Below are positions 11,211 through 45,879 of a stretch of 64,000 nucleotides of DNA, piece by piece (within the stretch, counting starts at the first letter, position 1; each line of letters starts with the position of its first letter). Source of the stretch: Chlorokybus atmophyticus (Eukaryota > Plantae > Mesostigma and Chlorokybus algae); assembly GCA_009103225.1 (NCBI GenBank), contig RHPI01001946.1, positions 62,001 to 126,000 on the forward strand. Direction: 5' to 3'. The translations under genes were made by a program, and so were the position numbers. Under the pieces are notes generated by a model. It was not told the origin of the DNA and did not search any database. It saw only the letters and a program-made list of their open reading frames with translations.

Positions 11211-12388
11211 ATGGAAGAAAACTCGGTGCCCACCTCAAAAGGGGAGAGCTCGAAAAAAGAGCAACCTTCCCGTGAGGAGGAATTTCCATCCATGGAAGAT
11301 ATTCCGAATCCGGATGATGCACCTGATGAGTCTCAAGCTGCCAAAGCTGCGGAAGCTTCAATGGATGATAGATCACCTTCTATATTCCCTGAGTTTTCCA
11401 TTCGCATGACACAGCAGGACTTGATGGAGCATTTCTTTAACACCTATGATCAGGACCCTCGTGAGGCGATTGTCTCATTCGTGAACTTTCTCTTCCTTTT
11501 GGCAGAAAAAGTTTCAAAGCTCACCACCTTTATGGGGCAAGATTGGGAGGGGCAGATGGGTGAAGGCAAACGTGTTCTGAATATGATCGAGCGTCTTCAG
11601 CGTGCTGACGGTGGTCCACCTGTTCAAGCACTTGCTCGTCCAACCGAGTTTGTTCCCAACAAGCAAGCGGCCATCTTCGACTGGCTTGTAAAGTTGCGAC
11701 ACTATGTCAACTCCCTTCACATTTTTGAGGAGGGGAAATTGCGTGTAGCTGAGTTGCTGATCCCAAACGATGCTCTGGCAGAGTGGTACCGCCGTAAGCG
11801 ACGGGATACAAACCTCGGGCGGGAAGTAAATCAGTTGTGCTTTTTCATGGAGCAGCGCAATGGTGGCGCAGATCCTGCCCAGGTTGCTCGCAACCAGCTG
11901 CACAACCTGCGTCAGAACGGGCGTCCGGTTCAGCAGTACATCCAGGATTTTCAGTCGTTTGTCAGCAAGATCAATGCTGGCAAACTACCTATCAGTGATG
12001 CTGATCAGCTGGATATGTTCAGGCGTGGCTTGGACACAGATCTCGTGCAGCATGTGGCCGTCAACCCCGCGAGTTTGCAAGTGAGTGGGCCTCGACGGAT
12101 TTACCAATGCTGATGCAGATGGTTGCTGCTGTGGACAGTGTAAAGCGCTCTCACGCCAACATGCAAACCACGGCAAAAGAGGCAGCCCCGGTTTCAGCTG
12201 CAAAGCGCCCGGCCACTGACAACAAACCTTTTGTGAAAAGGGCGAAACCATCTCATCCTGCTAGCCCCTACAATGCGGCCAAATCCATTATCACTTGCAG
12301 TTTCTGCAAGAAGACAGGTCATGGGGAGGCTAAGTGCTATGCAAAACAGAATGCACAGAAGGCGAAGCAGCAGAGAGACAAGAAATAG
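11211..12388 (+). pseudogene. gag: Retrotransposon gag with one frameshift near 12080
   Basis: ORF 11211-12113 has gag-like LRQNGRPVQQYIQDF and DMFRRGLD. It continues in another frame (EWASTDLPMLMQM...) to the zinc knuckle CSFCKKTGHGEAKC and a TAG at 12386. Confidence 0.9.
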
Positions 12389-12759
12389 GAATTGTCCGTG
12401 GTTGGTAGCTTAGTCGAGCAGAACGACTTTAAAAACTCTGTACTTCTTGATAAAGTTTTCTCTCTTTGTGATGTATCAGATGTATGGACTGATATGAGCA
12501 CACCACCTGTGTTGAAAAATACAAACGGTTGTGTTTCAATCAATGTTCCATTCTCTGAATTAGTAAGTGATGTTAAGCACTTACACGAGTTGCAATTACA
12601 ACATGCTGTCACTGCATGTGTAGTTATCCCTCGATATCATGGCCCATGGTCGCAATTGTTGAAAGGGGGAGACATGGTGTACCCATAAGTTGACTCTCAA
12701 ATCTCCATTTGAGTGGCACTGAGTGACCATCAAATGTAGCTAATGTCGGAGTGCCGTGA

Positions 12760-15700
12760 TTGGTAGCAGACTTGATAAAGATCACTTGCAACGGTGAAGC
12801 TCCTGTATCTTTGCGTGAGAGTTGCATGATTGATGATACTGGTGCAAACCATAACTTTGTTGAACATGCTTGGGTGAAACGTAATAACATTCCTTTCACA
12901 CCAGTCACGTCATATGTACGTGCTGCTGGTTCCACTCTCTATGCAATGGGAGAGGTAAAAGGGCGTTTTGTTATTAATGGCCATAAAACCCGACCAGCCT
13001 TCATTGTGGTGGATATTAGAATCCCCGGGGTGGATGTTGTTTTAGGGGAGCAATGGCACACTGAAGCAGGTTTACAATTAGACTCTCGAGCCAATACATG
13101 CACCCTTCGTAAAGGGAAACGTAGGATGACTTTAACAGCATCTGTACTCGCATGTATACCTCTCGATAATGTTCCGCTCCTCTCTGCTATGCAATTGAAA
13201 CGTTGCATGCGTAAACATGAGGAAGTATACTTTCTGCACTTACAACAGGTGGAAATACCTGCTGAACAGGCTATCAGTGACCCTGTGGTGCAGTCACTTA
13301 CAGAACAATACGCAGATGTATTTCAGGATGAACTCCCAGAGTTGCCTCCCGATCGAAACATACATCATACCATTCCGTTAGAGGAGGGGGCAAAGCCACC
13401 TTGGCGGCCTATATACAGGCTAAGTCCCTTAGAACACGCGGAGATGGAAAAACAGCTTAAAGAGTTATTGGACAAAGGTTTAATAACAAAGAGCATATCT
13501 CCTTTTGGTGCACCAATTTTGTTTGTGCCCAAAAAGAATGGCAAGCCACGCATGTGTATTGATTACCGTGCGTTGAACAAGGTAATTGTTAAAAACAGAT
13601 ACCTTTCGCCTCGGATTGATGATTTGTTTGATAAGCTGTCAGGTGCAACAGTGTTCAGCACGCTGGATTTGACCAGTGGTTATCATCAAATCAGAATCCA
13701 CCCGTCGGATATACAAAAAACTGCATTTCGCACCCCACTAGGACACTTTGAGTATAAAGTGTTACCATTTGGGTTAACAAATGCACCGGCTACATTTCAG
13801 ACAGCAATGAATGCGGTATTTGCTGATGAATTGTACAAGTTTGTACTGGTATATTTAGACGACATTATTGTGTTTAGCAAAACCCGGGAGGACCACCACA
13901 GGCATGTGGAATTGGTTCTAGCTAAGTTACGCGAACACAAATTCTATGCCAACCTGTCCAAATGCAACTTTGCAAAGGATGAACTACCCTTTTTAGGGCA
14001 TGTGATTGGCAAAGAAGGATTGAAACCAGATCCTCAAAAGGTGTGTGCGGTAAAGGATTGGCCACCACCCAAGGATGTACATCAGTTACGTGCTTTCTTG
14101 GGGCTAGCCAATTATTTCCGCAAGTTCATGCGAGCATATTCTGGCATGGCAAATCCTTCAACATCTTTACTAAGAAAAGATGTTAAATTTGTGTGGACGG
14201 AGGCACACGCGGTTGCTTTTACACGCATTAAAGATGCATTAACGCAAGCCCCTGTGTTAGCCTTCCCCGACCCCACCAAGCCTTTTGTGGTGATCAGTGA
14301 TGCTTCCACCATTGGGTGTGGGGCAGTCCTTCTACAGGATGACAGACCATGTGCATATGAAAGCAGAAAGTTCATTCCTGCTGAACGTAATTACACAACC
14401 ACTGAGCAGGAATTGCTCGGGGTGGTGCACGCGCTGCGCACATGGCGTTGCTACTTGGAAGGGGTGGAGTTTTCAGTAATTACTGATCACAACCCGCTCA
14501 CATTCTTTCATACGCAACAAAATCTGTCGAGGCGGCAAGCTAGGTGGAATGAATTCATTTCTCGTTTCACTTTCACTTGGCAATACCGTCCGGGTCGCAC
14601 CAATGTGGCGGATCCAGTAAGTCGCAGCCCTGCTCTTTTGGCGCTTACGCGCTCTCGAAGTACGCGTAATGTACAACAGCCTGAAGATCCTTTCTTAAAG
14701 GAAGTGTCCGCAGGTTATAACTCAGATGATTGGTTTAGCAGTCAAACCAACTTGCAACAGCTTACTGCTGTTAGCAATTTGTAGTATAAAGGGGAGCAGT
14801 TGGCAATTCCCAACTCGGGCGACTTGCGTAAGCAATGCTTACATTCAGTGAATGACCCGCCGTATGCTGGGCATTTGGGGAAACACAAAACACTCAAATC
14901 TGCGCAACAGTTATGCTGGTGGCCGTTAATGTCAGCTGACGTGGATCAATATGTTCGCACATGTGACGTGTGTCAACGTAATAAGCCACTACGACAAAAA
15001 CAAGCGGGATTGCTTAAACCATTGGCAATTCCAGAACAAAAGTGGGATAGTGTCAGTATGGATTGGATTACTGACCTACCTGAAACAGCAGCTAAATACA
15101 CTGCTATTGTGGTTTTTGTCGACCGTTTAACTAAAATGGTGCATTTTGCCCCGTGTTGCACAACTGTAAGTGCACGGGACTTGGCACACTTATTTGTGTC
15201 CACGGTCTTTCGCGTTCACGGGGTACCGCGTGAACTTGTCACATATCGTGATCCTTGGTTTGTCTCCAAGTTTTGGCGAGAAGTCTGTGAATTGTTGGGG
15301 GTAAAACAAAGCATGTCGACTGCTTTCCACCCGCAAACGGACGGTCAAACTGAGCGAGCAAATCAAATACTGGAAGAAATGCTTCGCCACTATGTGGCTC
15401 CTAATCATGCTGATTGGGACAGGTACTTGCCAATGGCAGAGTTCGCTGTGAACAACGCGTGGCAGGAAAGTGTAAAGGAAACCCCATTTNTTTTCTTGAA
15501 TTATGGGATTCGCCCGAACACACCAGCGTCATTGCGTGTACCTCGCAATGCCCTGATTGTACCAGCGGCAAAGGAATTTGCCACTAATATGCAAGAAAAT
15601 ATGGCTCGAGCCAAGCTGTGTCTGTCAGAAGCACAGGACAGGCAAAAAGCTTATGCTGATACACATCGAAAAATGGCCACTTTCGATGTCGGCGATAAAG

Positions 15701-16110
15701 TTTTGCTTAACGCAAAGAACATAACCATCAAAGGTACGGGTGCTCGCAAGTTGCTGCCCCGATGGTTAGGTCCTTTCTCTATCACTGATAGAGTTGGTAC
15801 GCACGCTTATCGACTGCAATTGCCCCCAAGCGTGCGTATACACAACGTGTTCCATGTGAACTTGTTGAAACCTTACCGCTCAGACGGTAGAACACAGCCT
15901 CCACCACCGCCAGTTGAGGTGGACAGCGAGCTCGAATACGAGGTGGAAGCTATATTGAACCATAAGCTAAATAGTCGAGGACGCGCAACTCGCTATTTGG
16001 TGAAATGGAAAGGGTATGGCCCGGAACATAACAGTTGGGAGCCCGACAGGCATCTTACGCACTGCCGCGAGTTGCTTCGAGCTTATTGGGATTCATGTCC
16101 TGTCCCATAA
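12760..16110 (+). pseudogene. pol: Retrotransposon pol (protease, RT, RNase H, integrase, chromodomain) with a nonsense codon
   Basis: DTGA protease motif, YLDDII RT motif, RNase H DAS...YESRK...TDH, integrase H-H-C-C zinc motif and SMDWIT, chromodomain YEVEAIL...YLVKWKGY...SWEP. In-frame TAG at 14782-14784 (expected Trp). The second catalytic Asp of integrase reads Tyr (VTYRDP, 15244). Confidence 0.95.
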
Positions 16111-27115: not shown

Positions 27116-28010
27116 TGTCACGCCCACAAAGCAGGGCGTCTGACTCTGAAGTACTTACTTATGGTAGTAAGTCAAGCTGTGTAAAGATTCCGCTTCATGA
27201 GCATGTGTAGTGCTTGAGCTTGTGAGACCTTGGGTATGATAAATTATACAAGGTAGTGATGCGGGCTAGCACAAGATTGGTCAATGCCTATGGCATGTGA
27301 ACTTATGTTAGTATATTGTGACTTGCCAAAGGAAGTGGCCATTGCAAGACGGTGAGCCGAGTTGGCAAACCACAAGACCGGTACTGTGGTAGTGCAATTT
27401 GCCATTGATGTAACAGTCGCATGGCAAGTGGTGCATGTGGGCAACTCGCAAGTACATGTGTAACTAGGGGAGCCTGCGTTTATGATTCCGAGGTAGGAAT
27501 GTTACTCATACAGTAACCTAAGGTGGTTTAATACTTCCGAGCTGGAGTTTGTTGGTTGCAATGTTGGAACAAGGTCAGCGCATAGTGACAAGGTTTGTGC
27601 CTAGGACATCCTGTACATGTGTGCCAGATCGGGAGAGCAGCATGTGGTATGCATGCTAAGTTGCATCCTTGGGTTGGGGTCAAGACACCAGCGTGTGTTC
27701 ACCACTCGAGGGCCACTTGTGCGTGAGGTGCCTAGTTGTTAGCTGATGAAGGGGCTCTCCCCCTCATCCCTTGTGGGGTGTGGTGTTGTGGGGTTGTGCG
27801 TATGTTGAACGTGTTCACGAGTGCTTGTCAGTGGGGGTGGAGCTGTGTGGAGAGGTTGGTGGTGATCACCTTTCTTGGTGCGCTGCTGCAACTTCCCCTG
27901 CAGGCTGCACCGTCACGGCGTGGTGCTGGTGGGACTTCCGCCGTAAGTTTTTGTGCTTGTGCATAAGTTTGCCAAGCCCTGAGCAGCAAATAGGTTGTGG
28001 TATTATTGCA
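27116..28010 (+). mobile_element. LTR of the second family, inserted in opposite orientation; no TSD recognisable
   Basis: Starts TGTCACGCCCACA. 27700-27990 is the reverse complement of about 38690-39000 (LGKLMHKHK segment shared). Followed by TCAGAG, a possible PBS remnant. Confidence 0.65.
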
Positions 28011-28321
28011 TCAGAGTTTGTTATATTTTTGCCGGCGATGGACAGCAACTTCTTTGGCAGCGCGGGTGTCAAGGAGCGTGAGGCCCGCGTGTGCAACAAG
28101 CTGGTGTCTCGGCGGCACCGCGGCATGGCGCACGATATCGGACGCTCTGACAACATCATTGAAGACCAACCAAACTTGCCTTGAAGGCCAGTTGGCTGGT
28201 CTTTAGTGATGTTGTATGCGGCACTTACCTTGGAGGCAAGTGCAGCATATACACGTTAATCATGAATTGATGTACGCCATCTACCATATGTGTATGTACT
28301 GCTGTTTGCAATGACACGTAT

Positions 28322-28360: not shown

Positions 28361-29269
28361 GCGCGTGCATGCGAGCATGCACGCGCGCACGCATGCACAT
28401 GAACACGCGCAATCTCTCAAGCACCCACACGTGTGTGTGCATGCATGTGCGCGCACACACACGTACGTAGGCACGCACACTTGCGCGCACGCATGTACAT
28501 AAGCACGCAAGCAAAGGCATGTGCACATGCACGCACACATATGTAGAAACCAACCAACATGCATGCATGCTACAGTGGCTCAATGATGAAGCGCGGTTCG
28601 GTGTTGCTCGTGACCTGTGGGTAGCACTTACTTGTAGGATTTCTCGACGTGTGTTATGTTATGCATGCCACAGGTTGCAGGCTCGACGCTCACGGCCAAG
28701 CTATGCAACCTGTGGGCGCAAGATGCTCTTGAGAAGGCTGGCTTTGGTGGTGAACCAACAAATATTGAATTCAACAACATTCCGTGCGAACATTCATTAC
28801 TTGCCATACTGAGATGTGTGCATTAGAAATGTTGGCAGCGTGACCGTGCTGCCAGTCCCAACCGGTATGGCGATAACCCTTTGCTTCCTTGCACTGATAC
28901 AGCTACAGCCAGCTGCAAGGTACTATCATACATTCATGCTTTGGACGCAAATGTGTATGCGTGCGTGTGTGCATGCCGTAGCGTGCACGAGCGCACGAGC
29001 GCTTGCGCGCTTGTGCGTGTGCGTGTGCAGGTGTTGTTGAATGTGTTCATGGGCGCTTCTATACATGCGTGTGTGTGCGCTTGAGCGCGCCTGTGCATAA
29101 CTGCATGCGACATTGCGAGCAAATGTGCGTGCACAAGTATGTTGATGTCGGTGGTAGTGTAAAGTGGTGCTTATACTGGTCTGCACAGGTTTGAGCTATG
29201 GCCGCGAACTGACCAGACAAGCGCAGCTCTACCTGCTTAGCAAACGCATGTTAGGCCAACTACAACACA

Positions 29270-30150
29270 TCAGCTGAAAAGACTGATAAAGTTTGCGTGT
29301 TGTGAAGGCAGCAACCAAGTAGAGAACAATGTGCCAGGTGTTTCTCTATTACCAGAAACATGAAGCACCCTCATCACCGAAGGCCCTGACAATGCTGGGA
29401 TCAATGCTGTTCTCAAGTCAAGCGTTTCAACTGTTATTGCTCTATGACTACTTGATGTTGTGTGTGCCTGACAAGTGGTAGACTCGAATGTTGCCTCCTG
29501 GACAGGAATGTGTCTGGGACACGTGTCGTTGCGCAAGGTGAGAACAACACCGACTGCGGCTTAAAGCTCCAAGGCTTTAATGCTTCACATGATAGGTGTG
29601 AGTTGAGCTTTTTCGTTGTTGCTGTTGTTGTTGTGATATATGAATGATCAGCCGGTGTATCTGTAGGTATCCTGTGTGGTATTTCACACAGCAGCGGCAG
29701 CGGTTAGGACCACCAAGCAAGAAATGGAGTTGTTCCTTGATAGGCTGGGCAAGTGTTTGCATGACAGGACGCAGATGTTCAATTGAGGTTGAGAGGTGTT
29801 CTTATTTGTATTGGAGCACCTCTACACTGGACTAGTATGAGCATGGTCACACATGAACGTCACAGGGTCAACATTGAATTGCAGTCTCACTCGAGGTTAA
29901 GACAACGGCAAAGACATTGATGCATGTCTGGTTGAGCTGATGTCAAGTGCAAAGGCTTTAGGTTCAGGCACACTGCATAAGGTGTGATTGTGCTCAGCCC
30001 AGACAACAACCACAGCCGACAGCACTGACTGAATGGTAGCAAGACGCGTATTGCTGAAAGGAATATGCCGCTTATATCACGATACATGGGTGTGCTGACA
30101 TGCCTGATGCTTACTAGCATTAACACCAGTTCAAACAACAGATACACAGA
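29270..30150 (-). pseudogene. Possible degenerate leucine-rich-repeat gene
   Basis: LSGLSTITPYAVCLNLKPLHL...LCRCLNLE and VETLDLRTALIPAL...MRVLHVSGN resemble LxxLxL / CxNLxxLxL repeats. No continuous ORF. Confidence 0.35.
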
Positions 30151-30650
30151 CTAAACTTGCTACACGATGTTCACACCGTCACATACGCACATTTGCACGT
30201 GCACACACACTACAGTCTGCCTACACACCAGGTACTCACTGCCATATTAGGTGATAATTAGCATTGACACTGTTTCGGACAGGGGGGGGGGGGGCAATGA
30301 ATGTAGTAATATCAACAACTGAGATAAATATCACATCCACATACTCACTACGAGCTAACCTTGTCTAATACATGCTGACACTCGAATCTTCCAACAATTA
30401 CATCACCTGGCAGCGTCACAGCAGCACACACAGTACTTTCCCACTCTCGCTGTAGTCACACATCAGAGCTGATCACTATCCCATGCATGGAGGTTGCAAA
30501 AGGCTGCTGCCACTTCGGTTGTCAGCATTTACTTACAACTGTGCTTTTGGCATACTGTCCACAAACGCAACTCTACAAACCCACTATGCTCCACTCTGCC
30601 AATGACAGATCAGCCAACATTACTTACTCAGAAACTTCTAAGTGCTAACC

Positions 30651-31357
30651 TTAAACGTTGAGGCCCTGCTACGTCTGGATGGACAAGGCGAACTGCGCCT
30701 TGAGGCCCTTGTTAGCGTTCATGGCCTTCGTCCTGCAGCCGGGGATGGTGGCAACAATGTTGACTGCGAGCGTGTCTACAGCGGCCTCAAGGGTCTGCAA
30801 GACAGCAGCCACAGGCTGGCCAATAAAGGGAACCTCAGAGAAAAGTCCACCCCTGTCGATGAGGACGCCCAGGAGAGCCTGGTGAATATGGATAAACTCA
30901 ATGAGGGCGTCGCAGACCACACCTTGCTTGTCGGCGTGGTAGGCAGTAGCGCCCACGAGGCTCTGCAGTCAAAACATGTCCCAAAAAAACGCGAGCTTGA
31001 TGCTGAGTCTCCAAGCATGCAGACAGTAGTTACAACACTCACATGCACCCACACATGCAGCCTAAGACACACACCCACACTTACCACAGCCACGTTGACG
31101 CCAGTGTTGGTGATGGTGATGAAGCGTCAGATGATCTCAGGGAAGGGTCCCTGGCCAAGGGGGTCGTTGACGGTGGTAATGGTCTCAGCGATGGAACGGA
31201 TGGCGCGGGACTGCGCGGTCAGGGTCTTGATGGATGCGGCCAGGTTGGCAGCAGTGGGGAGGTTAGCGCCTGTACAGCTGCATGCTGTGTGGGCGTCAAC
31301 CGCCACCACAGCGAACAGCATCATGCAGAGGACGGCGACAGCCATCTTGGAAGCCAT
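30651..31357 (-). pseudogene. Fungal UVI-1-like secreted protein, copy 1 (two exons, two in-frame stops)
   Basis: Signal-peptide-like MASKMAVAVLCMMLFAVVAVDA; LGQGPFPEII; FIHIHQALLGVLIDRGGLFSEVPFIGQPVAAVLQTLEAAVDTLA. Intron 30963-31084 (GT..AG, phase 0). TGA at 31127-31129 and TAG at 30669-30671. Confidence 0.8.
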
Positions 31358-33051
31358 CTCGGCTCCCTCTTTAACAACTGATGCACAGACAGATACAAGC
31401 AGTGAGTTTGGATTGGGTGTGCAGCATGCACTGGCAGCTGATGTGACAATGTGAGCAGTGCGTCAGCAACAGCTGCAAGAGGAGGGACATGCGTATGTGG
31501 ATGCAACAGGCAACACTTGATATGCGTCTCGTGCGCCAGACACACATGTGCAACACTTGCACCCAACCAACATGTTCAACAGGCAGCATTCACCAAGCAA
31601 TGCATGTACCGTAAACTGCACACACTAAGCGATGATAAAAGCGAGAAAGCGTACCAAGCCAGTAAGGCACACCTGCTTGCTGTAGCGGACTCTCACATCG
31701 GCGCTTGAATCTGCTCGGCAACGCCTACCAACACTGGCGACTCTCGCATCTATACATACTTATGTGTGTACATGTATGTGGTATACTTCTCCACACCCTT
31801 CATCTTATTTCCTACAGAAAGAGAGGCGGCATCATTGAACTTCCGCCGCCCCTTCCCCGTCTACCTTCCTGCCTTGGTGGCTGGCAAGCACGCAGGGCGA
31901 GCATGCAGTCACGTAAGAAGCGTGAGGCACATGCGTTGAGGTAAATTTGTTCCTTTTTCAAGTGGCTACACGGTGATCCACTTAGGGAACGATCTGTGTA
32001 GCCACATAAAAGCAGTGAGCCCGACACTCTCTTACAGTGATACTGTACGAGAGTGTCGGGCTCACTGCGAGCCAAGGTACGCCGCTACAAGTCGCGGCTG
32101 TCTGACTCGCGATTGCATCATGAGGCAGCGCGCAGCCATCCTGCTAATTCTGCAGCAAGTCAATAATGCCTACCCATACTACATTATCCTTAAAGTATTG
32201 CGCGCTGTTGGCGTCCCGGAGTTTACGTGCGTGACGTTACCACCGGCGTGCCTGCTTATATGGTGCGCCTATTGCGATGGTGGCCTTTGCGGTGCAGGCG
32301 GCTCCAGCCAGGTGGCCTGGTATTCTTGACCACTCACAGCACTAACACTGACAGTTTGTAAGTGAGACGAGCGTGTCAGATTTTGGCTCTCGTACTCTGA
32401 CAGCAGCTACGTTGCGCGCCCTTTATAGACAGCATTTTTCGATTGAAGTTTTCTTCGTGAGATGCGCGCCATCTGAGAACAGGCGACGGCCTCGCCGCAC
32501 ATGACGACTTTCTCGCAATTTTCTGGTGTGCTTGAGGCATGTCAAACCGCGATGTGTGTGCTTGTATGTTTGCGGCGGTTGGCCCGCCCACCGCAAACAC
32601 AGCACCGCAAGATTGCATGACAAAAGCAGGACTTGAGTATGGCGAAGAAAGTGTGCTTCCCAAAGGCAGCGGAAGCTCAATGATGCCCCTCTCCCCATAG
32701 GAAGTAATGGGGAGAGTGTGAAGGGCATAGAGAGGTATACCTCATACATGCACACACATATATAGGCGGGAGAGTCGGCAGCGGTGGTAAGCGTTGTCAT
32801 ACGGTGGCCGACGCTGCTGTGAGCGTACCAGTCTGCAAACAGGTGTGCATTAGTCACTTGGTACGCTGCGCTCCCTCAGTTGCATCCCTGTTTGGTGTGT
32901 TCAGTCTGTGGCATATGCTTTGGTTGATGAATGCGGCTTTGTGCCTGGCGCATGTGATGCATGTCGAATGTTGCCTGTAAGATGAAGTTATGTTGTGTCA
33001 GCTGTCAACGACAGTCAAGACTGACCCCTACACTCTGTTAATTCAGATACG

Positions 33052-33911
33052 ATGGCTCAGAAGCAAGTCATGCTGGGCGCTGCCCTCTGCTGCCTGCTGC
33101 TGTCTGGCATGGCAGCGTCAGTGGCAAACGCCCAGTCATGCCCACCCTTCCCAATGCCCTCCACCCAGTCCAGCAACACCGAGCTGGCCAACCTTCTTGA
33201 TATGTTGACGAGTCAGTCGGCATCCGCACCATCGCAGAAGAAGCTTACTATCATCAACGGCCCTCTCCTGCTCATCGGCCAGGGCCCCTTCGTGCAGTTC
33301 CTCTCGGCATGATTGCAACCACCGGAGCTCAGCTCGCTGTGGTAAGTAGGAGCTGTTACAAGCTGTGCGGTGCTGTGGTCAATGCATCTGTGCCGTGTCG
33401 CGCATGTGCGAGTGTGTTGGTGTTGGTTGTTGTCTTTTTTTCTTTTATTTTGCCTGCAAGAATTTAGATGTATGTGTTGATTGTTGTTTTGGTTTCTGAT
33501 CCTGTCTCACATCTTGCGCATGCATGTGCATGTGTATCTTATCAATCGACTTACATTCCCTCCGCTCTCAACTATTGTGTTGACATGATGCAGAGGCTGG
33601 TTGGCTCTGTGGCCTACCCCGCAGCTGACCAGACTGTAGTGTGCAAGTTCTCAATCCAGTTCATCAAGATGCACGAGACCCTTCTCAATGTCCTCATTGG
33701 CAAGGCTGGCTTGCTCGCCACTGTCCCCCTCATCGGTCAGCCCGTGGCCGCCATTCTGCGCACAGTCGAAGCCGCCGTTGATACGCTGGCCTTCAGGATT
33801 GTGGCCCTTATCCCAGGCTGCAAAGCTGATGTCATGAGGGCCAAGTCAGGACTCAACGGCTTGGACATCACCTTCGCCCAGGCTATTACCTCCTACAGCG
33901 GTGCCAAGTAG
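33052..33911 (+). pseudogene. Fungal UVI-1-like secreted protein, copy 2 (two exons, apparent frameshift near 33300)
   Basis: Signal-peptide-like MAQKQVMLGAALCCLLLSGMAASVANA; TIINGPLLLIGQGPF; FIKMHETLLNVLIGKAGLLATVPLIGQPVAAILRTVEAAVDTLAF. Intron 33342-33593 lies at the same position and phase as in copy 1. Confidence 0.8.
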
Positions 33912-35570
33912 GCTGCTTTTTGTGGAGAGATCTTCTGTAGGTCTTGGAGTAACAGTGGGGTATCTATAAGAGAAAAGGCGTAAAATGGTTTGTTGCTTTT
34001 TGTCTCTGTGTAGAGTTGACAGGAGTAGTGTTTATGGTTGAACATTATTAGTGCTTTTACGAGGTTGTGTGCAGCGATGTGCTACAACCCGAGTCAATGA
34101 CAATGACTTATGCATATGTGTTTAGTAATGCTTGCGAGATGAGTGTATGCAACGGGTCAGATGAGTTAAAGGGTGATCCACCTGTCTTGTCGAGCCACTT
34201 GCATGGACGTTGTCGGCGGTTATCGTCTAATAGTGTCTGTGTATGTATGCGTTGGCATGTTGGCCAGGAAGGTAGACCAATTAACTGTCTTGTCGCGATA
34301 GTATTGAAACAATCAATGGGTGAATCCAAGCACTATGCATGCCTGTCACCTGTCTGCAAAGGAGAGTGGGGTACTGAACATGAGCATATGTTTGCGTGAG
34401 TACTGAGCACGTCGTATGTGCACATATAAGAAAACATTGCAACTATGCACTAGAGTTACGTGCTATTTGTCGCTTCGTGTGTGTATGTGTGCGTAAATGC
34501 ATGTGCGTGCGTCTCGCTGACTACATGCACATTGCATATGAACTACCATTCTGCTCAGTCCCAAAGCCAATTGCTATTCCTCAACGTATGATGCATGTAG
34601 CATTGCAACTGATTACGACAGTAAACCACACAGCAAAATCTGATTACAACAAAGTCAGCAAACCAGCACGCTAGACAACCAGCAAGAAATCGTCACACTG
34701 AAGTACATTACAGTTCTTATACATTCATGTTGCAATGCGTTCTCAACCTGCATATAAGCACTCATTATGCCTGAGCATATGCTTTACCAGGTGCACACAT
34801 ATATACTACTTGTTGACCATGTGCTGCTACCAACATGTTAGTGCAACACACGCAGCCAATCACCTGCTGACATAGTCGAGAGTACTCTGCAACATATAGC
34901 GCAGACACTTTGTGGCAGTTTGTTTCGGCAAAAGGTGCCACGTAGTTGCTGCTGTTACTTATGTCGTACTGCTTCTGGAAACCAACCACTTCTCCAACCA
35001 CCCTGCTGTACAGACTATATCTCCATTGTTCAGGGACTGCGCATGGCTGACATACCATTGATGCGCAAGCAACTGCAACAAAGTTTACTTTGGCGCAGAC
35101 TCCTCAGGCTGCTGCGTAAATGCGGTCTCTGCCTTTGTGTCCTCCGGGATTGACGTGTTCTAGGCTTGTGATGGCTTCGTGGGCAATGTTGGAGCCTATA
35201 GCAAAAACCGTTCTTGGTGACCATATCAGCCAACTAGCATTGCGATCAAATTAACATTGTCGATGCTGCGACATATTCTCAAAAATAAGGGTTGACCACT
35301 GCAACACGACTGGTTATGACAACACCAGAAACAACAACAGAAAGAACAACACGCCGGCACTCAGGACTGTTCCAAGCAGCACTGCGTTGAGCATGGGTGG
35401 GGAGTTGTCCTGCAACAGGAATGCGGGTGAGCTCCACACTGCTGGCAACAGCCAGAAACAGCACACCCAACAATTCCTCACCGCTCTCGGCTCAACGCAA
35501 TGCCAAATCTCTGGCTTGACTTCACTTGGGTTGAATTGAGTCTGCACCCTTCGAGAGTTTGAGAGAGTTC

Positions 35571-35572
<2 letters not shown>

Positions 35573-35654
<82 letters not shown>
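35573..35654. repeat. (GA)n microsatellite, about 40 units
   Basis: Direct reading of the sequence. Confidence 0.98.
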
Positions 35655-35659
<5 letters not shown>

Positions 35660-35699
35660 AAGGTAGAGCCGAAGCTCAGCTCCACCTTCTGCCGTTGAA

Positions 35700-37430
35700 C
35701 TCGCAGAGCAATGGTGAGGGAAGAAGTTATGTGCTTGTTAAGTGAAGGACTTTTCCTCTCCAATGAAATGTCAGGCAGCGTTGCCGGATGGCCCTTTTCC
35801 CTAATTATGCGTGCTATAAAGCGCTTGGCTACATGCCGCATGTAGCCAAACGCTATGTAAGGCTGAAAGCTCATGCGGACTGTAGTGAACTGCTTAAATG
35901 CAGAGGCAGAACTCCCCCCCCCCCCCCCCCCCCCGCCNCTTCTGTTGCAGGCCACCAATCAGCATGCAGAGGTTGAGGACGCTATTTGTTTTAATCACAG
36001 CAGTGTGGACCACATAAGTTTACAATGTATGCCACATCGCATGATGCCTTTCTGTCGATGATGGCTGCGCATATGCATGCTGTCGAGCTTCAGAATCGTT
36101 TGTTTAGCCTCACACTTGTTGGCATTCTCTTGAACACAGCCAGGTTTTCCCGCCATTGAATTAAGAGCACATTGGCTCTCTAAAGATAACTCCACCACTT
36201 CTTGAAGTTGTAATGGGAGTCTCCCACTAATTGTCCTAGCTATTCTCAGTGTCGCAGTCAAGGTGTACCACCACTTCAACACCTGCTGCATTATCTCCTG
36301 AATGGGCCGCACTTTGGTCATCAGATTAGCCAAATGTCATGTCTGTGATATGTTGCGGCATGCGTTGCGGCCTTACCACAAAGGATTTGCGTAGGCTTAG
36401 GAGAGACTGCATCGTCTTCCCGTGGCGCACACAACAGGACTCATTGGTGTTTGCGGTTCGCGATAGAGTCGGGTGGGAGCTGGCATGCTTGTTAACGGCA
36501 GAGGGCGGGCTCGGTATCTTGAACCCTCAACTGCCTCACACATGCGTTTCTTGCCAAGTGGGCGGCTAAGCTCTTTAATCCGACTTGGCTGCCGCAAAAA
36601 ACACTTTCGTTGCGGAAAACTGTTTCCGTCAGTTGGAGGCTTCACTGATGGATCCACTCGACCTGCTACCAACAAAAGGGTCATGCGACATGACTATATA
36701 TATATATATATATATATTTGTACATTTTTTCACATATGCCCCCCGCAGCTAAACTCCTCTCCGCGTTTTGAAAAGAGCACAATAAGGTGGCCTGGCATTG
36801 GCCGTATATTCTCTGAGCATGGCACGACAAGTGGCCCCACTCGTGCTCACCTCCATACCATGTTATGCTCATGTGCTGAGACATCACTTATTTTTCAAAC
36901 CTTTGATTACGTTTGTTAGCTCCACTAACGATACAGTTCTTACCTTAGGCTCCTACATGCGTCAGCTCAAACCCTGATCTGCAGCGGGCTTTGAATCTTA
37001 TAAAAATTAGGAGTTGATTATAGCCTTCTTCGGCCTTACACTGCAGAGGAACTTAGCCATTAGGTTCCAACGGCCATCCAGCCGCGCCTTTTCAAGCTGT
37101 GGGCGATCATCCCCCTCCACCTGGCGTGCTTTATTGGATAAGGGGCCGCACCTTCTCGAGTTTAAGGAGTGGTGGGCGAGGGTGGAGGCCAATGCGAGTA
37201 TGCAGGCAGTGCTTATGGTTGAAAAAGCTCTCTACTCCCTTTTTATGCCATCGCACTCTTTGTCGCTTAAAATCGGGATGGTCATGTGTCTATTGAAAGA
37301 AAAACGTAGCTTGCTTCACCTCTCCTCCATTCACTGTGCTCGGGTCATGCGCGTACATATGCGTGTGGGTATTGTATGCAATTGCACGGATGCATGCCTC
37401 GTGCCATTTTCATCTATCCATTCATGACAT
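35700..37430 (+). mobile_element. Degenerate L1-like non-LTR retrotransposon (late RT and post-RT region)
   Basis: Ordered relic motifs: GSVAGWPFS (for G-x-RQG-x-PLS), GSLPL (YLG-x-PL), MGRTLVIRL (LS-xx-GR-xx-LI), VGWELACLLTAEGGLGIL (W-xx-LC-x-P-xx-EGGLGI) and STWRALL (S-xx-WRSIL). Many stops and frameshifts. Confidence 0.55.
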
Positions 37431-43553: not shown

Positions 43554-45879
43554 ATGATGGTGTTGGTCGCAGGCCTTCGCAGGAGCTTGAGGTCAATTAG
43601 GGGGTCGGTTAAAACAGCAGCAGCAGCACCCAGGCGTTACTTGCCGTCCTGTTTCGGGCGGTGTTCGCCAACTCCTCACGCCGGTGGTTCAAGGTGAGCA
43701 GCCTACAGGACTGTCTTGTAAGGTGTATGCGTGCATTCACCTATGCCAGGGCAAGTATACGTTTATTTACATGGTCGGCTTTCTTGCATGTCTGACTACT
43801 TGACAACAACAACAGCCATGTGCAGAGGCGTCTCAAACTCATTTGTTCTAGCATTACACAGCAACAGTGCTGCATCCCAGCTCATAACATTTGTTCATCG
43901 CGTTCACAATACGTTCAGTCCATATGTGGTGTTGAGTGTGCAAGTGTTCGCAGGTCTTGGTCCAACGGACTGTCTGGGTCTGAGGAGTCAAACGGTTTGG
44001 ATAGCGAGCGGTCGGTGCCTGCGCCAGCTCCTCGTTCATTGACCAAGGAGGAGAAGAAGCAGTTGGGCAAGAGGCGCCTTGTGCCTGTACGTGACATATG
44101 CAAACTGCTCGACAGTCAACTTTAGCACGCTCTGCAGAACTAACGAAATGCAGTTGGCTTTTGCGATGTATTAGCAATGACAACCACACTGATCTGCCAC
44201 GTATTTTGTTTTGCGGGGTTACCGCTAAAGCTGATGTTGTTTGCTGACAGGCAGGGGACATGACACCAAACGCCGCTGAGATTCCAGTGACATCAGATGC
44301 AAATCGGTATCAGTTCATTCAGGAAATTGGCAAGGGCAACTTTGGTGTGACTTGTCTCATGCTAGACAAGCTGACTGGCGAGAATGTGGCCGTCAAGGTG
44401 TGCCAATGCGGTACCTGCTGAGTAGCCTGCATGTCCTTCTGTGTGTACACTGAGGCTTATATCGGCTTGTTTGCAGTTCATTGAGCGAGGCCCTAGGATT
44501 GATGAGAATGTCTGTCGAGAGGTGTTGAACCATCGCAAGCTGAGGCATCCAAACATTGTTCAGTTCAAGCGTGTCTTGCTCACGCCTACCCACCTTGGCA
44601 TTGTCATGGAGTACTGCGCGGGCGGGGAGCTCTTCCATGTAAGTGTGCTGTGCTTGAGAGTCATCACACAGTGCATGTATGAACAGCGCCAGCTGCATGA
44701 TGAACACAACCTGAGTGCAATGCTGTTGCAGCACATTTGCAAGGCGGGGCGTTTCTCAGAAGATGAGGCAAGGTTCTTTTTCCAGCAACTGATAAGCGGT
44801 GTGGAGTACTGTCACACCCAGAAAGTTGTTCATCGCGACCTGAAGGTGAAATTGTTTGTGCTGGTGGTTGCAGGAAATGCAACCTGCTGTTGTCGGCATG
44901 TAGCGTAGTCTGAACTTGCTGTTTGCAGTTGGAGAATGCGCTGCTGGATGGCAACCCGCCACGCTTGAAGATCTGCGATTTTGGTTACTCGAAGTCAGAG
45001 AAGGAGAACTCGCAGCCGCATTCCATGGTTGGCACGCCAGCATACATTGCGCCAGAGGTAAGTATACCCACAGCATGTTTTTCATAAAGGTGTGTCTATT
45101 CTTGTCTGCTGCACACGGTGCTCATTGTGTATGCTTCTCTCAGGTGTTGACAGGGCTCAAGTATGACGGCAAAGTGGCGGACATCTGGTCAAGCGGCGTG
45201 TTGCTGTACGTGATGTTGGTGGGCGCGTATCCGTTTGAGGACTCAGCGCATCCACGGGATCTGCACCGCACCATCAAGCGCATCATGAGCGTGCAGTACT
45301 CCGTCCCTGCGGACGTGCGGCTCAGCCCGGCATGCTACGACATCCTCTCACGCATCTTTGTGGCGGACTCTCTCCATCGCATCACTGTTGCGGAGATCAA
45401 GAAGCACCCCTGGTTTCTCAGGAACCTGCCAGTCGACCTGTTGACAACGCCGCCGACCAGCCTCGAACACTTACAGGTAAAGCCACACACACAACTGTAT
45501 TTAGAAGGAGTAGGTCACTGGATGTTGCTCAACATGGTCTTGCAGTGATAGCGTTGTTATGGTGGCAAACAGGCAATGCTTGCTTGACAGCTTTACTTAT
45601 ACGTGTCGTCAGGTATTATAAGTCAAGTCGTCATACCTTAGTGTCGCTTGGTACTCCCATTACAAGTCATTCCAGCTGTATCTTGCATGCTATCTCTGAG
45701 CTGTGAAGTACGCCGTGCTCATTGACAATGTGTTTATCTTGCAGAGTGAGGAGGAGGTGCGGCGTATCATTACGGAGGCAAAGCAGGGTACGAAGCCTTC
45801 TGTTTTCGAGCAAATTGATGAGGAGGATGAATCTGACAATGATGATGGAGTGGATGTAAATGGCAACCCCTTCACATGA
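43554..45879 (+). CDS. SNRK2: SnRK2-family Ser/Thr kinase with a predicted 94-aa N-terminal extension
   Basis: [12 protein letters not shown]|[28 protein letters not shown]|[37 protein letters not shown], SnRK2 box [13 protein letters not shown] and acidic tail ending in TGA at 45877-45879. Upstream exons 43554-43693 and 43954-44086 splice in frame to 44251. Confidence 0.93.

What the first reader, a model, noticed from the sequence alone, without database searches (positions are those of the whole stretch)
30651..33911. Divergent pair of fungal UVI-1-like secreted-protein genes in an alga: candidate fungus-to-alga transfer
Seen: two head-to-head paralogues with signal-peptide-like N-termini and a shared phase-0 intron after ...AV. 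From memory, NGPLLLIGQGPF and HxxLLNxLIGKAGL..VPxIGQPVAAxLRxVExxVD are signature stretches of ascomycete UVI-1-family proteins. I know of no such family in green algae. The shared spliceosomal intron and flanking algal genes argue for real integration rather than contamination. Location in a TE island fits HGT followed by duplication (inference).
Basis: partly seen in the sequence, partly recalled or inferred. Interest (0 to 1): 0.75.

Follow-up and report, generated by a model that had tools for sequence, protein, structure and literature searches.

The report
Decayed fungal-type UVI-1 genes in Chlorokybus
Two neighbouring, broken copies of a fungal-type secreted lipid-binding protein gene sit in the genome of the soil alga Chlorokybus; with one intact copy elsewhere on the same scaffold, they point to an old gene transfer from an ascomycete-like fungus into this early-branching relative of land plants.

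Summary
Two divergently oriented two-exon paralogues (59% identical in exon 2) lie at 30669-31357 (-) and 33052-33911 (+). They share a phase-0 intron and signal-peptide-like starts.

Both match Pfam PF17615 (C166), which is the fungal UVI-1 family. The window is Chlorokybus atmophyticus: gene A is JGI model Chrsp90S09248.

Both copies are broken at the end of exon 1: A has an in-frame TGA, and B has a net 7-nt deficit that shifts the frame. An intact 196-aa paralogue, Chrsp90S09245, lies outside the window. Its predicted structure is a five-helix bundle like the fatty-acid-binding Mp1p/Afmp4p domains.

All other named relatives are Dikarya fungi or bryophytes (Marchantia, Sphagnum; Physcomitrella from a preprint). 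No other alga was found.

In a full-length tree the Chlorokybus clade is sister to the ascomycete UVI-1 clade. The bryophyte copies nest among Agaricomycetes. A conserved cysteine pair agrees with this split. However, an AU test does not reject a single plant clade (p = 0.12).

Verdict: the fungal origin is well supported and looks old. Independence from the bryophyte copies is probable but unproven. The two window copies are most likely pseudogenes. This is a new member of a known kind, of moderate interest.

The parts
31085..31357 (-). Gene A, exon 1. It encodes the signal-peptide-like start and the first half of the PF17615 domain. An in-frame TGA lies at 31127-31129. Relative to the intact paralogue P0273 it also has a 3-residue deletion.
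30963..31084 (-). Gene A intron: 122 nt, GTAAGT...CAG, phase 0 after ...AV.
30669..30962 (-). Gene A, exon 2: the C-terminal half of the PF17615 domain (43.9 bits), open to its stop codon. It is identical to residues 63-159 of JGI model Chrsp90S09248 (P0003).
33052..33341 (+). Gene B, exon 1: 290 nt (2 mod 3). Frame 0 stops at 33310-33312. The last 11 codons before the donor are in another frame. The net deficit relative to gene A is 7 nt.
33342..33593 (+). Gene B intron: 252 nt, GTAAGT...CAG, at the same position and phase as in gene A.
33594..33911 (+). Gene B, exon 2: the C-terminal half of the PF17615 domain (55.8 bits), open to its stop codon.
31506..31850 (.). Upstream block of gene A. 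It is homologous in inverted orientation to 32665-32978, so the 5' region was duplicated together with the gene.
32665..32978 (.). Upstream block of gene B, the partner of 31506-31850 (69% over 282 nt; 82% over 39 nt).

Best explanation
The locus is an old inverted duplication of a Chlorokybus atmophyticus gene for a secreted UVI-1/PF17615 protein. This is a five-helix bundle of the Mp1p/Afmp4p/HsbA type; in the solved fungal relatives the bundle encloses a fatty acid.

The family entered the Chlorokybus lineage by horizontal transfer from an ascomycete-like (Pezizomycotina-stem) fungus, long enough ago to acquire a host-type intron and to duplicate at least twice. This transfer was probably separate from the one that gave bryophytes their Agaricomycete-like multi-domain versions.

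Both copies in this window evolved under purifying selection for most of their history. Both are now disabled inside helix 2 of the bundle: a nonsense codon in A and a frameshift in B. They are therefore most likely pseudogenes. The intact paralogue Chrsp90S09245, outside the window, carries whatever function remains. My inference is that this function is binding of lipids or hydrophobic surfaces in the wall or mucilage of this aero-terrestrial alga.

Shown: family membership, the breaks, the paralogy, the fold of the intact paralogue, and the taxonomic distribution among named hits. Inferred: direction and age of the transfer, its independence from the bryophyte copies, secretion, and ligand binding.
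For: - **Family:** PF17615 hits on all four exon pieces. The same model scores Bipolaris UVI-1 at 149.7 bits.
- **Host:** P0003 (EukProt/JGI Chlat1 8772, Chrsp90S09248) is 100% identical to gene A's exons.
- **Intact paralogue:** P0273 (Chrsp90S09245, 196 aa) is 82% identical to gene A and is absent from the window.
- **Breaks:**
- **Selection:** dN/dS between the A and B exon 2 is 0.20, with dS about 1.7, which is saturated.
- **Distribution:** an exhaustive phmmer search of 1.84 billion representatives gave 288 hits. Named hits are Ascomycota, Basidiomycota, Marchantia, Sphagnum and Chlorokybus only. Of 126 unnamed representatives, 118 are nearest to fungi, 8 nearest to bryophytes and none nearest to Chlorokybus.
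- **Tree (85 rows, 191 columns, LG+C20):** the Chlorokybus clade (100/99) is sister to 41 ascomycete UVI-1 rows inside a 98/95 clade. The bryophyte clade (100/98) lies inside an Agaricomycete clade (100/99).
- **Cysteine pair:** present in Chlorokybus 2/2 and in the ascomycete groups 17/18 and 5-6/6. Absent in bryophytes 0/7 and Agaricomycetes 0/11.
- **Introns:** a fungal UVI-1 locus has introns at ...AFRE|FVRVHQ and ...VVD|TIAF, not at the Chlorokybus position.
- **Fold:** the AlphaFold2 model of P0273 has pLDDT 89.3. Top Foldseek PDB hits are Afmp4p with palmitate (5j5k, target TM 0.89) and the Mp1p ligand-binding domains with arachidonate.
Against: - The AU test does not reject a single Chlorokybus + bryophyte clade (p = 0.12 full-length, 0.31 exon 2 only).
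- In the exon-2-only tree Chlorokybus grouped elsewhere, with an unidentified Logan transcript, P0005.
- No read-level or RNA evidence was available, so the TGA and the frameshift could be assembly errors, or could be bypassed by splicing as in the JGI model.
- Secretion and lipid binding are untested.
- No donor lineage can be named: the best fungal identity is only about 37-50%.
Confidence: 0.62

Rival explanations
1. There was one ancient acquisition, or an even older vertical origin, in the streptophyte stem. It was inherited by both Chlorokybus and bryophytes and lost in every other streptophyte lineage. The Chlorokybus genes would then not reflect a separate fungus-to-alga event.
For: The AU tests do not reject one plant clade (p = 0.31; p = 0.12). 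The family exists in Marchantia, Sphagnum and Physcomitrella.
Against: The ML tree separates the two plant groups by three strongly supported branches, and holding them together costs 34 log-likelihood units. The cysteine pair is shared by Chlorokybus and ascomycetes but is absent from bryophytes and Agaricomycetes. Bryophyte proteins are multi-domain arrays, whereas the Chlorokybus proteins have a single domain. This scenario also needs losses in all other streptophyte algae and in vascular plants.
Confidence: 0.2
2. The two window genes are still functional. The lesions would be assembly errors, or would be bypassed by use of upstream GT donors, as in JGI model Chrsp90S09248, which skips the TGA.
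For: Gene A is annotated with an open 159-aa product that uses a donor at 31171. Exon 2 of both copies is open, and dN/dS is 0.20. The upstream regions are conserved at 69%.
Against: The JGI model removes the equivalent of P0273 residues 63-93. That is the short helix plus all of helix 73-94 of a five-helix bundle. It uses a weak GTCAAC donor although the conserved GTAAGT donor, shared with gene B, is intact. A 7-nt deficit in non-repetitive sequence is not a typical assembly error. Gene B has no model among the high-scoring EukProt hits.
Confidence: 0.2
3. This is contamination or a chimeric join: the UVI-1-like genes belong to a fungus that was co-sequenced with the alga.
For: The family is otherwise overwhelmingly fungal. 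GC3 of the exons (0.72-0.76) is somewhat higher than in the neighbouring kinase ORFs (0.61-0.64).
Against: The nearest fungal sequences are only 37-50% identical. There are three diverged paralogues on one scaffold. The introns are 122 and 252 nt long and lie at a position not used in the fungal locus examined. The contiguous sequence also carries SepSecS exons 1.6 kb away, a kinase gene and a chromovirus. No chimeric junction is apparent.
Confidence: 0.03
4. The TGA in gene A encodes selenocysteine. Chlorokybus has Sec machinery, and a SepSecS gene lies next door.
For: SepSecS exons lie at 27771-28181 and 28816-29037.
Against: No SECIS-like match was found in 28500-36000 on either strand, even at E up to 5. 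The intact paralogue has an ordinary sense codon, not Cys, at that position. The site lies inside a bundle helix, not at a redox motif.
Confidence: 0.01

Closest known systems
UVI-1 of Bipolaris oryzae (Cochliobolus miyabeanus, Q9P338) and the Pfam family PF17615 (C166)
   Same: Same Pfam family, above the gathering score. Same length class (about 185-205 aa), with an N-terminal hydrophobic leader, a GQGPFP motif and an HQxLLNxLIGKxGL...GxPVAAVLR core.
   Different: The host is a streptophyte alga. Identity to fungal members is only about 35-50%. The Chlorokybus proteins keep a cysteine pair that the 41 sampled 'UVI-1 proper' fungal rows lack. They have one intron at a different position. The two window copies are broken.
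Mp1p ligand-binding domains (Talaromyces marneffei) and Afmp4p (Aspergillus fumigatus), PDB 5ecf, 5csd, 5j5k
   Same: The predicted fold of the intact paralogue is the same five-helix bundle (target TM-score 0.82-0.89, rmsd 1.9-2.2 A over about 155 residues). These domains enclose palmitate or arachidonate.
   Different: Sequence identity is only 11-16%. There was no sequence-level PDB hit. Ligand binding was not tested, and there is no mannoprotein Ser/Thr-rich region or GPI signal.
HsbA (Aspergillus oryzae, PF12296) and MoSVP of Magnaporthe oryzae
   Same: A related helical family. Some relatives co-hit PF12296. HsbA binds hydrophobic surfaces and recruits lytic enzymes; MoSVP is a small secreted HsbA-domain protein (PMC6859710).
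   Different: The window pieces and P0003 give no PF12296 hit. Function in an alga is unknown.
Bryophyte PF17615 proteins (Marchantia MPTK1_4g06545 with 5 domains; Sphagnum CY35_12G120700 with 7 domains; a Physcomitrella secreted protein)
   Same: Green-lineage members of the same otherwise fungal family.
   Different: They are multi-domain arrays, lack the cysteine pair, and nest with Agaricomycetes rather than with ascomycete UVI-1.
Documented fungus-to-plant transfers, for example the Mucoromycota-derived macro2 gene of mosses (PMC7181705)
   Same: A fungal gene family with a patchy presence in early-diverging plants, carrying introns in the recipient.
   Different: Here the recipient is Chlorokybus, in the streptophyte lineage most distant from land plants. 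The apparent donor group is Ascomycota. I did not read that paper's details.

Membership tests
Pfam PF17615 (C166) = UVI-1 family | Match to the family HMM above the gathering score (36.7 bits) | tested here: met
   Exon 2 of B scores 55.8 bits and exon 2 of A scores 43.9 bits. The exon 1 pieces score 24.2 and 23.1 bits at profile positions 16-81 and 5-80. JGI model P0003 scores 44.7 bits.
Pfam PF17615 (C166) = UVI-1 family | A complete, uninterrupted domain of about 170 residues | tested here: not met
   Gene A has an in-frame TGA and gene B a frameshift within the domain. The feature is met only by the out-of-window paralogue P0273 (199 bits against my family HMM, positions 1-184 of 186).
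Pfam PF17615 (C166) = UVI-1 family | N-terminal signal peptide (secreted protein) | tested here: inconclusive
   The hydrophobic leader with VDA / ANA motifs was read from the sequence. pLDDT is low over residues 1-30 of P0273. No predictor was available.
Pfam PF17615 (C166) = UVI-1 family | Induction by near-UV light (the origin of the name) | not testable with these tools
   No expression data were reachable. The original UVI-1 paper is not in the library.
Mp1p / Afmp4p-type lipid-binding five-helix bundle | Five-helix bundle fold superposable on solved ligand-binding domains | tested here: met
   This was tested on the intact paralogue P0273 only: pLDDT 89.3, Foldseek probability 1.00, target TM 0.82-0.89 to 5j5k, 5ecf and 5csd. 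The window copies are interrupted in helix 2.
Mp1p / Afmp4p-type lipid-binding five-helix bundle | Binding of a fatty acid in the central cavity | not testable with these tools
   This needs a binding assay or a structure.
HsbA (PF12296) | Match to the PF12296 HMM | tested here: not met
   No PF12296 hit for the four window pieces at E up to 1, nor for P0003. Only some fungal and bryophyte relatives co-hit it.
Horizontal gene transfer, fungus to Chlorokybus | Recipient sequences nested among donor-group sequences with support | tested here: met
   The Chlorokybus clade lies inside a 43-row clade (98/95) whose other members, where named, are all Ascomycota. Further ascomycete clades are the next relatives.
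Horizontal gene transfer, fungus to Chlorokybus | Absence from the recipient's relatives | tested here: inconclusive
   No other alga appears among the named hits of three searches. No unnamed representative is nearest to Chlorokybus. However, many hits are unnamed, only 150 of the 288 hits were listed, and bryophytes do carry the family.
Horizontal gene transfer, fungus to Chlorokybus | Rejection of the vertical / single-plant-clade alternative | tested here: not met
   AU p = 0.31 and 0.12.
Horizontal gene transfer, fungus to Chlorokybus | Real integration in the host genome | tested here: met
   A JGI gene model on scaffold Chrsp90. Host-type introns at a position not used by a fungal UVI-1 locus. 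Contiguous SepSecS, kinase and Ty3/gypsy sequences. Read-level linkage was not tested.

The most novel reading that the evidence does not exclude
An ascomycete-stem fungus donated a UVI-1-type secreted lipid-binding protein gene directly to the Chlorokybus lineage, independently of the Agaricomycete-like transfer into bryophytes. This would be a molecular trace of intimate fungus-streptophyte-alga contact on land. The intact paralogue would still serve the alga's aero-terrestrial life through surface, lipid or UV-stress biology, while the family is now being lost copy by copy.
Probability: 0.45. Interest if true: 0.6.

Novelty: new member of a known kind. Interest (0 to 1): 0.5.

Why it matters
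Chlorokybus belongs to the streptophyte lineage most distant from land plants and lives on soil and rock. A recent fungal timetree paper states that no complex symbiosis between fungi and streptophyte algae is known today (PMC12592215). A fungal secreted-protein family fixed, given an intron and duplicated in this alga would therefore be rare genomic evidence of past close contact.

Together with the separate Agaricomycete-like arrays in liverworts and mosses, it suggests that this lipid- or surface-binding module was taken up repeatedly by plants living on land surfaces.

For annotation, it shows that model Chrsp90S09248 is a stop-avoiding model of a probable pseudogene, and that a second copy is unannotated.

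Tried and rejected
- **Word-indexed search with exon 2 of B:** it found only one Colletotrichum protein and missed even gene A's own model, so I did not read its blank as absence.
- **PDB sequence search with the family profile:** no real hit. The fold search was needed instead.
- **Selenocysteine reading of the TGA:** no SECIS match; rejected.
- **First AU test (p = 0.04):** discarded as unfair. Its constraint left out the unnamed bryophyte-like rows. The fair versions give p = 0.31 and 0.12.
- **Exon-2-only tree:** too few columns (90) and most forks unresolved. It was superseded by the full-length tree once the intact database paralogue P0273 was found.
- **The look-up of encoding contigs:** it identified P0005 only as Logan runs SRR32069681/2 and found nothing for P0003. 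I therefore had no transcript or read evidence, no fungal genomic loci from that route, and no locus for P0273.
- **Metagenome scan with P0273:** it found only relatives at 38% identity, which turned out to be fungal UVI-1 loci. These were useful for intron positions only.
- **ESM Atlas:** only ascomycete HsbA clusters.
- **Literature:** I found no paper describing this family in Chlorokybus.
- **The search of earlier findings by sequence:** blank.
- **Joined spliced model:** All window searches were exon by exon, by reference. The only full-length sequences used were the database proteins P0003 and P0273.
Full report
**What is there**

Between 30669 and 33911 lie two divergently transcribed two-exon genes.
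- Gene A (- strand): exon 1 31085-31357, intron 30963-31084, exon 2 30669-30962.
- Gene B (+ strand): exon 1 33052-33341, intron 33342-33593, exon 2 33594-33911.

Both introns start GTAAGT, end CAG, are phase 0 and follow ...AV. The exon 2 products are 59% identical (E = 3e-35). The exon 1 products are 34% identical. Both start with a basic and then hydrophobic leader that ends in a small-residue motif.

The 5' flanks are also homologous in inverted orientation, at 69% over 282 nt and 82% over 39 nt. The pair therefore arose by an inverted duplication of gene plus upstream region. The region is not repeated elsewhere in the window.

**Both copies are broken**

Exon 1 of A is 273 nt but carries an in-frame TGA at 31127-31129. 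Exon 1 of B is 290 nt (2 mod 3): the ATG frame stops at 33310-33312, and the last 11 codons before the donor are in another frame. Relative to A there is a net 7-nt deficit.

The breaks lie in the same short stretch, just after the GQGPF motif.

Window sequences were searched exon by exon, by reference.

**Host and paralogues**

The exhaustive phmmer search and the cluster look-up returned P0003. This is EukProt Chlorokybus atmophyticus, JGI Chlat1 8772, Chrsp90S09248. It is 100% identical to 31172-31357 plus 30672-30962. The window is therefore Chlorokybus scaffold Chrsp90.

That model avoids the TGA by using a GTCAAC donor at 31171 instead of the GTAAGT donor that gene B shares.

A profile search found a third copy, P0273 (Chrsp90S09245, 196 aa). 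It is 82% identical to gene A, open throughout, and not present in the window. At the position of A's TGA it has an ordinary sense codon, and A also lacks three residues before GQGPF.

Gene B has no high-scoring model in that search.

Between the A and B exon 2, dN/dS is 0.20 with dS about 1.7, which is saturated. The duplication is therefore old and both copies were long under selection. The disabling changes look late.

**Family**

All four exon pieces hit Pfam PF17615 'C166'. Some relatives co-hit PF12296 HsbA; the window pieces do not.

**Fold and likely action**

AlphaFold2 on P0273 with a 65-sequence alignment gave pLDDT 89.3 and pTM 0.81. The model is a bundle of five long helices plus a short one.

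Foldseek against the PDB gave these top hits (probability 1.00, target TM 0.82-0.89, rmsd about 2 A):
- Aspergillus fumigatus Afmp4p with palmitate (5j5k) and with arachidonate (5j5l)
- Talaromyces marneffei Mp1p ligand-binding domains with arachidonate (5ecf, 5csd)

Lower in the list were a Drechmeria virulence factor (6zpp) and a Pleurotus laccase small subunit (8paq). A sequence-only PDB search found nothing.

The intact protein most likely works as a secreted helical bundle that holds a fatty acid or binds hydrophobic surfaces, as Mp1p and HsbA do (PMC6859710). This is inference from fold.

The breaks in A and B, and the 31 residues skipped by the JGI model, fall in helix 73-94 of that bundle. 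None of those products should fold in this way.

**Distribution**

The exhaustive search gave 288 representatives at E <= 1e-3. Named members fall into these groups:
- Ascomycota: many Pezizomycotina, including the lichen-formers Lasallia, Thelocarpon and Pseudocyphellaria.
- Basidiomycota: Trametes, Cubamyces, Exidia, Mycena, Psilocybe, Gloeophyllum.
- Marchantia polymorpha: proteins with 5 and 2 domains.
- Sphagnum magellanicum: a protein with 7 domains.
- Chlorokybus.

A Physcomitrella secreted protein with PF17615 is mentioned in bioRxiv 10.1101/2024.03.26.586753.

Two odd labels are likely contaminants: a 'Zoysia japonica' UVI-1 and a Rhizophlyctis entry on a 2.6-kb contig.

Of 126 unnamed representatives, 118 are nearest to named fungi, 8 nearest to bryophytes and none nearest to Chlorokybus. 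A JGI metagenome scan with P0273 found only relatives at 38% identity.

No other alga was seen.

**Phylogeny**

The exon-2-only tree (128 rows, 90 columns) was poorly resolved.

With P0273 a full-length tree became possible (85 rows, 191 columns, LG+C20, careful search):
- Chlorokybus P0273 plus B exon 2 (100/99) is sister to 41 ascomycete 'UVI-1 proper' rows, inside a 98/95 clade.
- The next relatives are further ascomycete clades.
- Marchantia, Sphagnum and three unnamed rows (100/98) sit inside an 18-row clade (100/99) that is otherwise Agaricomycete, with Gloeophyllum next to them.

A cysteine pair agrees with this. It is present in Chlorokybus (2/2) and in two ascomycete groups (17/18 and 5-6/6). 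It is absent from the 41 UVI-1 rows, from bryophytes (0/7) and from Agaricomycetes (0/11).

Even so, the AU test does not reject one Chlorokybus + bryophyte clade: p = 0.12, delta lnL 34; p = 0.31 for the exon 2 set. An earlier p = 0.04 used an unfair constraint and is discarded.

**Integration and age**

A fungal UVI-1 locus from a metagenome (L003/L004, 67% identical to Bipolaris UVI-1) has introns at AFRE|FVRVHQ and VVD|TIAF. Both Chlorokybus copies are continuous across those sites and instead have one longer intron at ...AV|xLVG.

The contiguous window also holds:
- SepSecS exons (27771-28181 and 28816-29037)
- kinase exons (44441-45548)
- a Ty3/gypsy chromovirus (11211-16110)

No SECIS element is present, so the TGA is not a selenocysteine codon.

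Contamination is very unlikely. The low identity to any fungus, the saturated dS between paralogues and the different intron position all indicate an old event.

**Verdict**

The fungal affinity and the real integration are supported. 'Absent from the green lineage' is wrong for bryophytes, and a separate transfer into Chlorokybus is favoured but not proven. The two genes in this window are probable pseudogenes of a small local family whose intact member lies elsewhere on the scaffold.

I therefore could not obtain transcripts, reads, the P0273 locus or more fungal gene structures.

Noticed in passing
window 27771-28181 and 28816-29037 (+): Exons matching SepSecS (O-phosphoseryl-tRNA(Sec) selenium transferase), profile positions 5-47 and 71-118 of 389. 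This is selenocysteine machinery in Chlorokybus. ORFs of 35 aa or more before gene A did not show the remaining roughly 270 profile positions, so the gene may have many small exons or be truncated.
   Followed up: partly
window 11211-16110 (+): A Ty3/gypsy chromovirus-type retrotransposon with open gag, RT-RNaseH and integrase-SH3-chromodomain ORFs. It looks young or intact.
   Followed up: partly
window 32012-32068: A near-perfect hairpin (27-nt arms, 3-nt loop, 96% complementary) in the unique spacer between the two divergent genes, about 200 nt from the centre of the inverted duplication. Its only Rfam match is a non-significant miRNA-precursor hit (E = 0.14).
   Followed up: partly
window 44441-45548 (+): Two adjacent ORFs covering Pkinase profile positions 41-127 and 168-263: an intron-containing protein kinase gene.
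   Followed up: no
P0002, P0008 (Marchantia), P0266 (Sphagnum), P0137 (Gloeophyllum): Bryophytes carry tandem arrays of 2-7 PF17615 domains that nest within an Agaricomycete clade (100/99). This is a separate candidate fungus-to-bryophyte transfer followed by internal domain amplification.
   Followed up: partly
P0003 = JGI Chrsp90S09248 versus window 31085-31171: The public gene model for gene A uses a weak GTCAAC donor to skip an in-frame stop, deleting a whole helix of the domain. It is probably an annotation artefact over a pseudogene. Gene B appears to be unannotated.
   Followed up: yes
P0179 ('Zoysia japonica' UVI-1) and P0295 (Rhizophlyctis rosea, 2.6-kb contig): Two database entries place typical ascomycete UVI-1 proteins in a grass and in a chytrid. 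Both look like fungal contamination of those data sets rather than real occurrences.
   Followed up: no
L001/L002 (Logan SRR32069681/2), protein P0005: An unidentified 246-aa relative on transcript-sized contigs of about 1 kb with no interruption of the ORF. It grouped with Chlorokybus in the exon-2 tree, but with lichen-fungus sequences in the full-length tree. Its Kex2-like KR sites suggest a fungus. The organism is unknown.
   Followed up: partly
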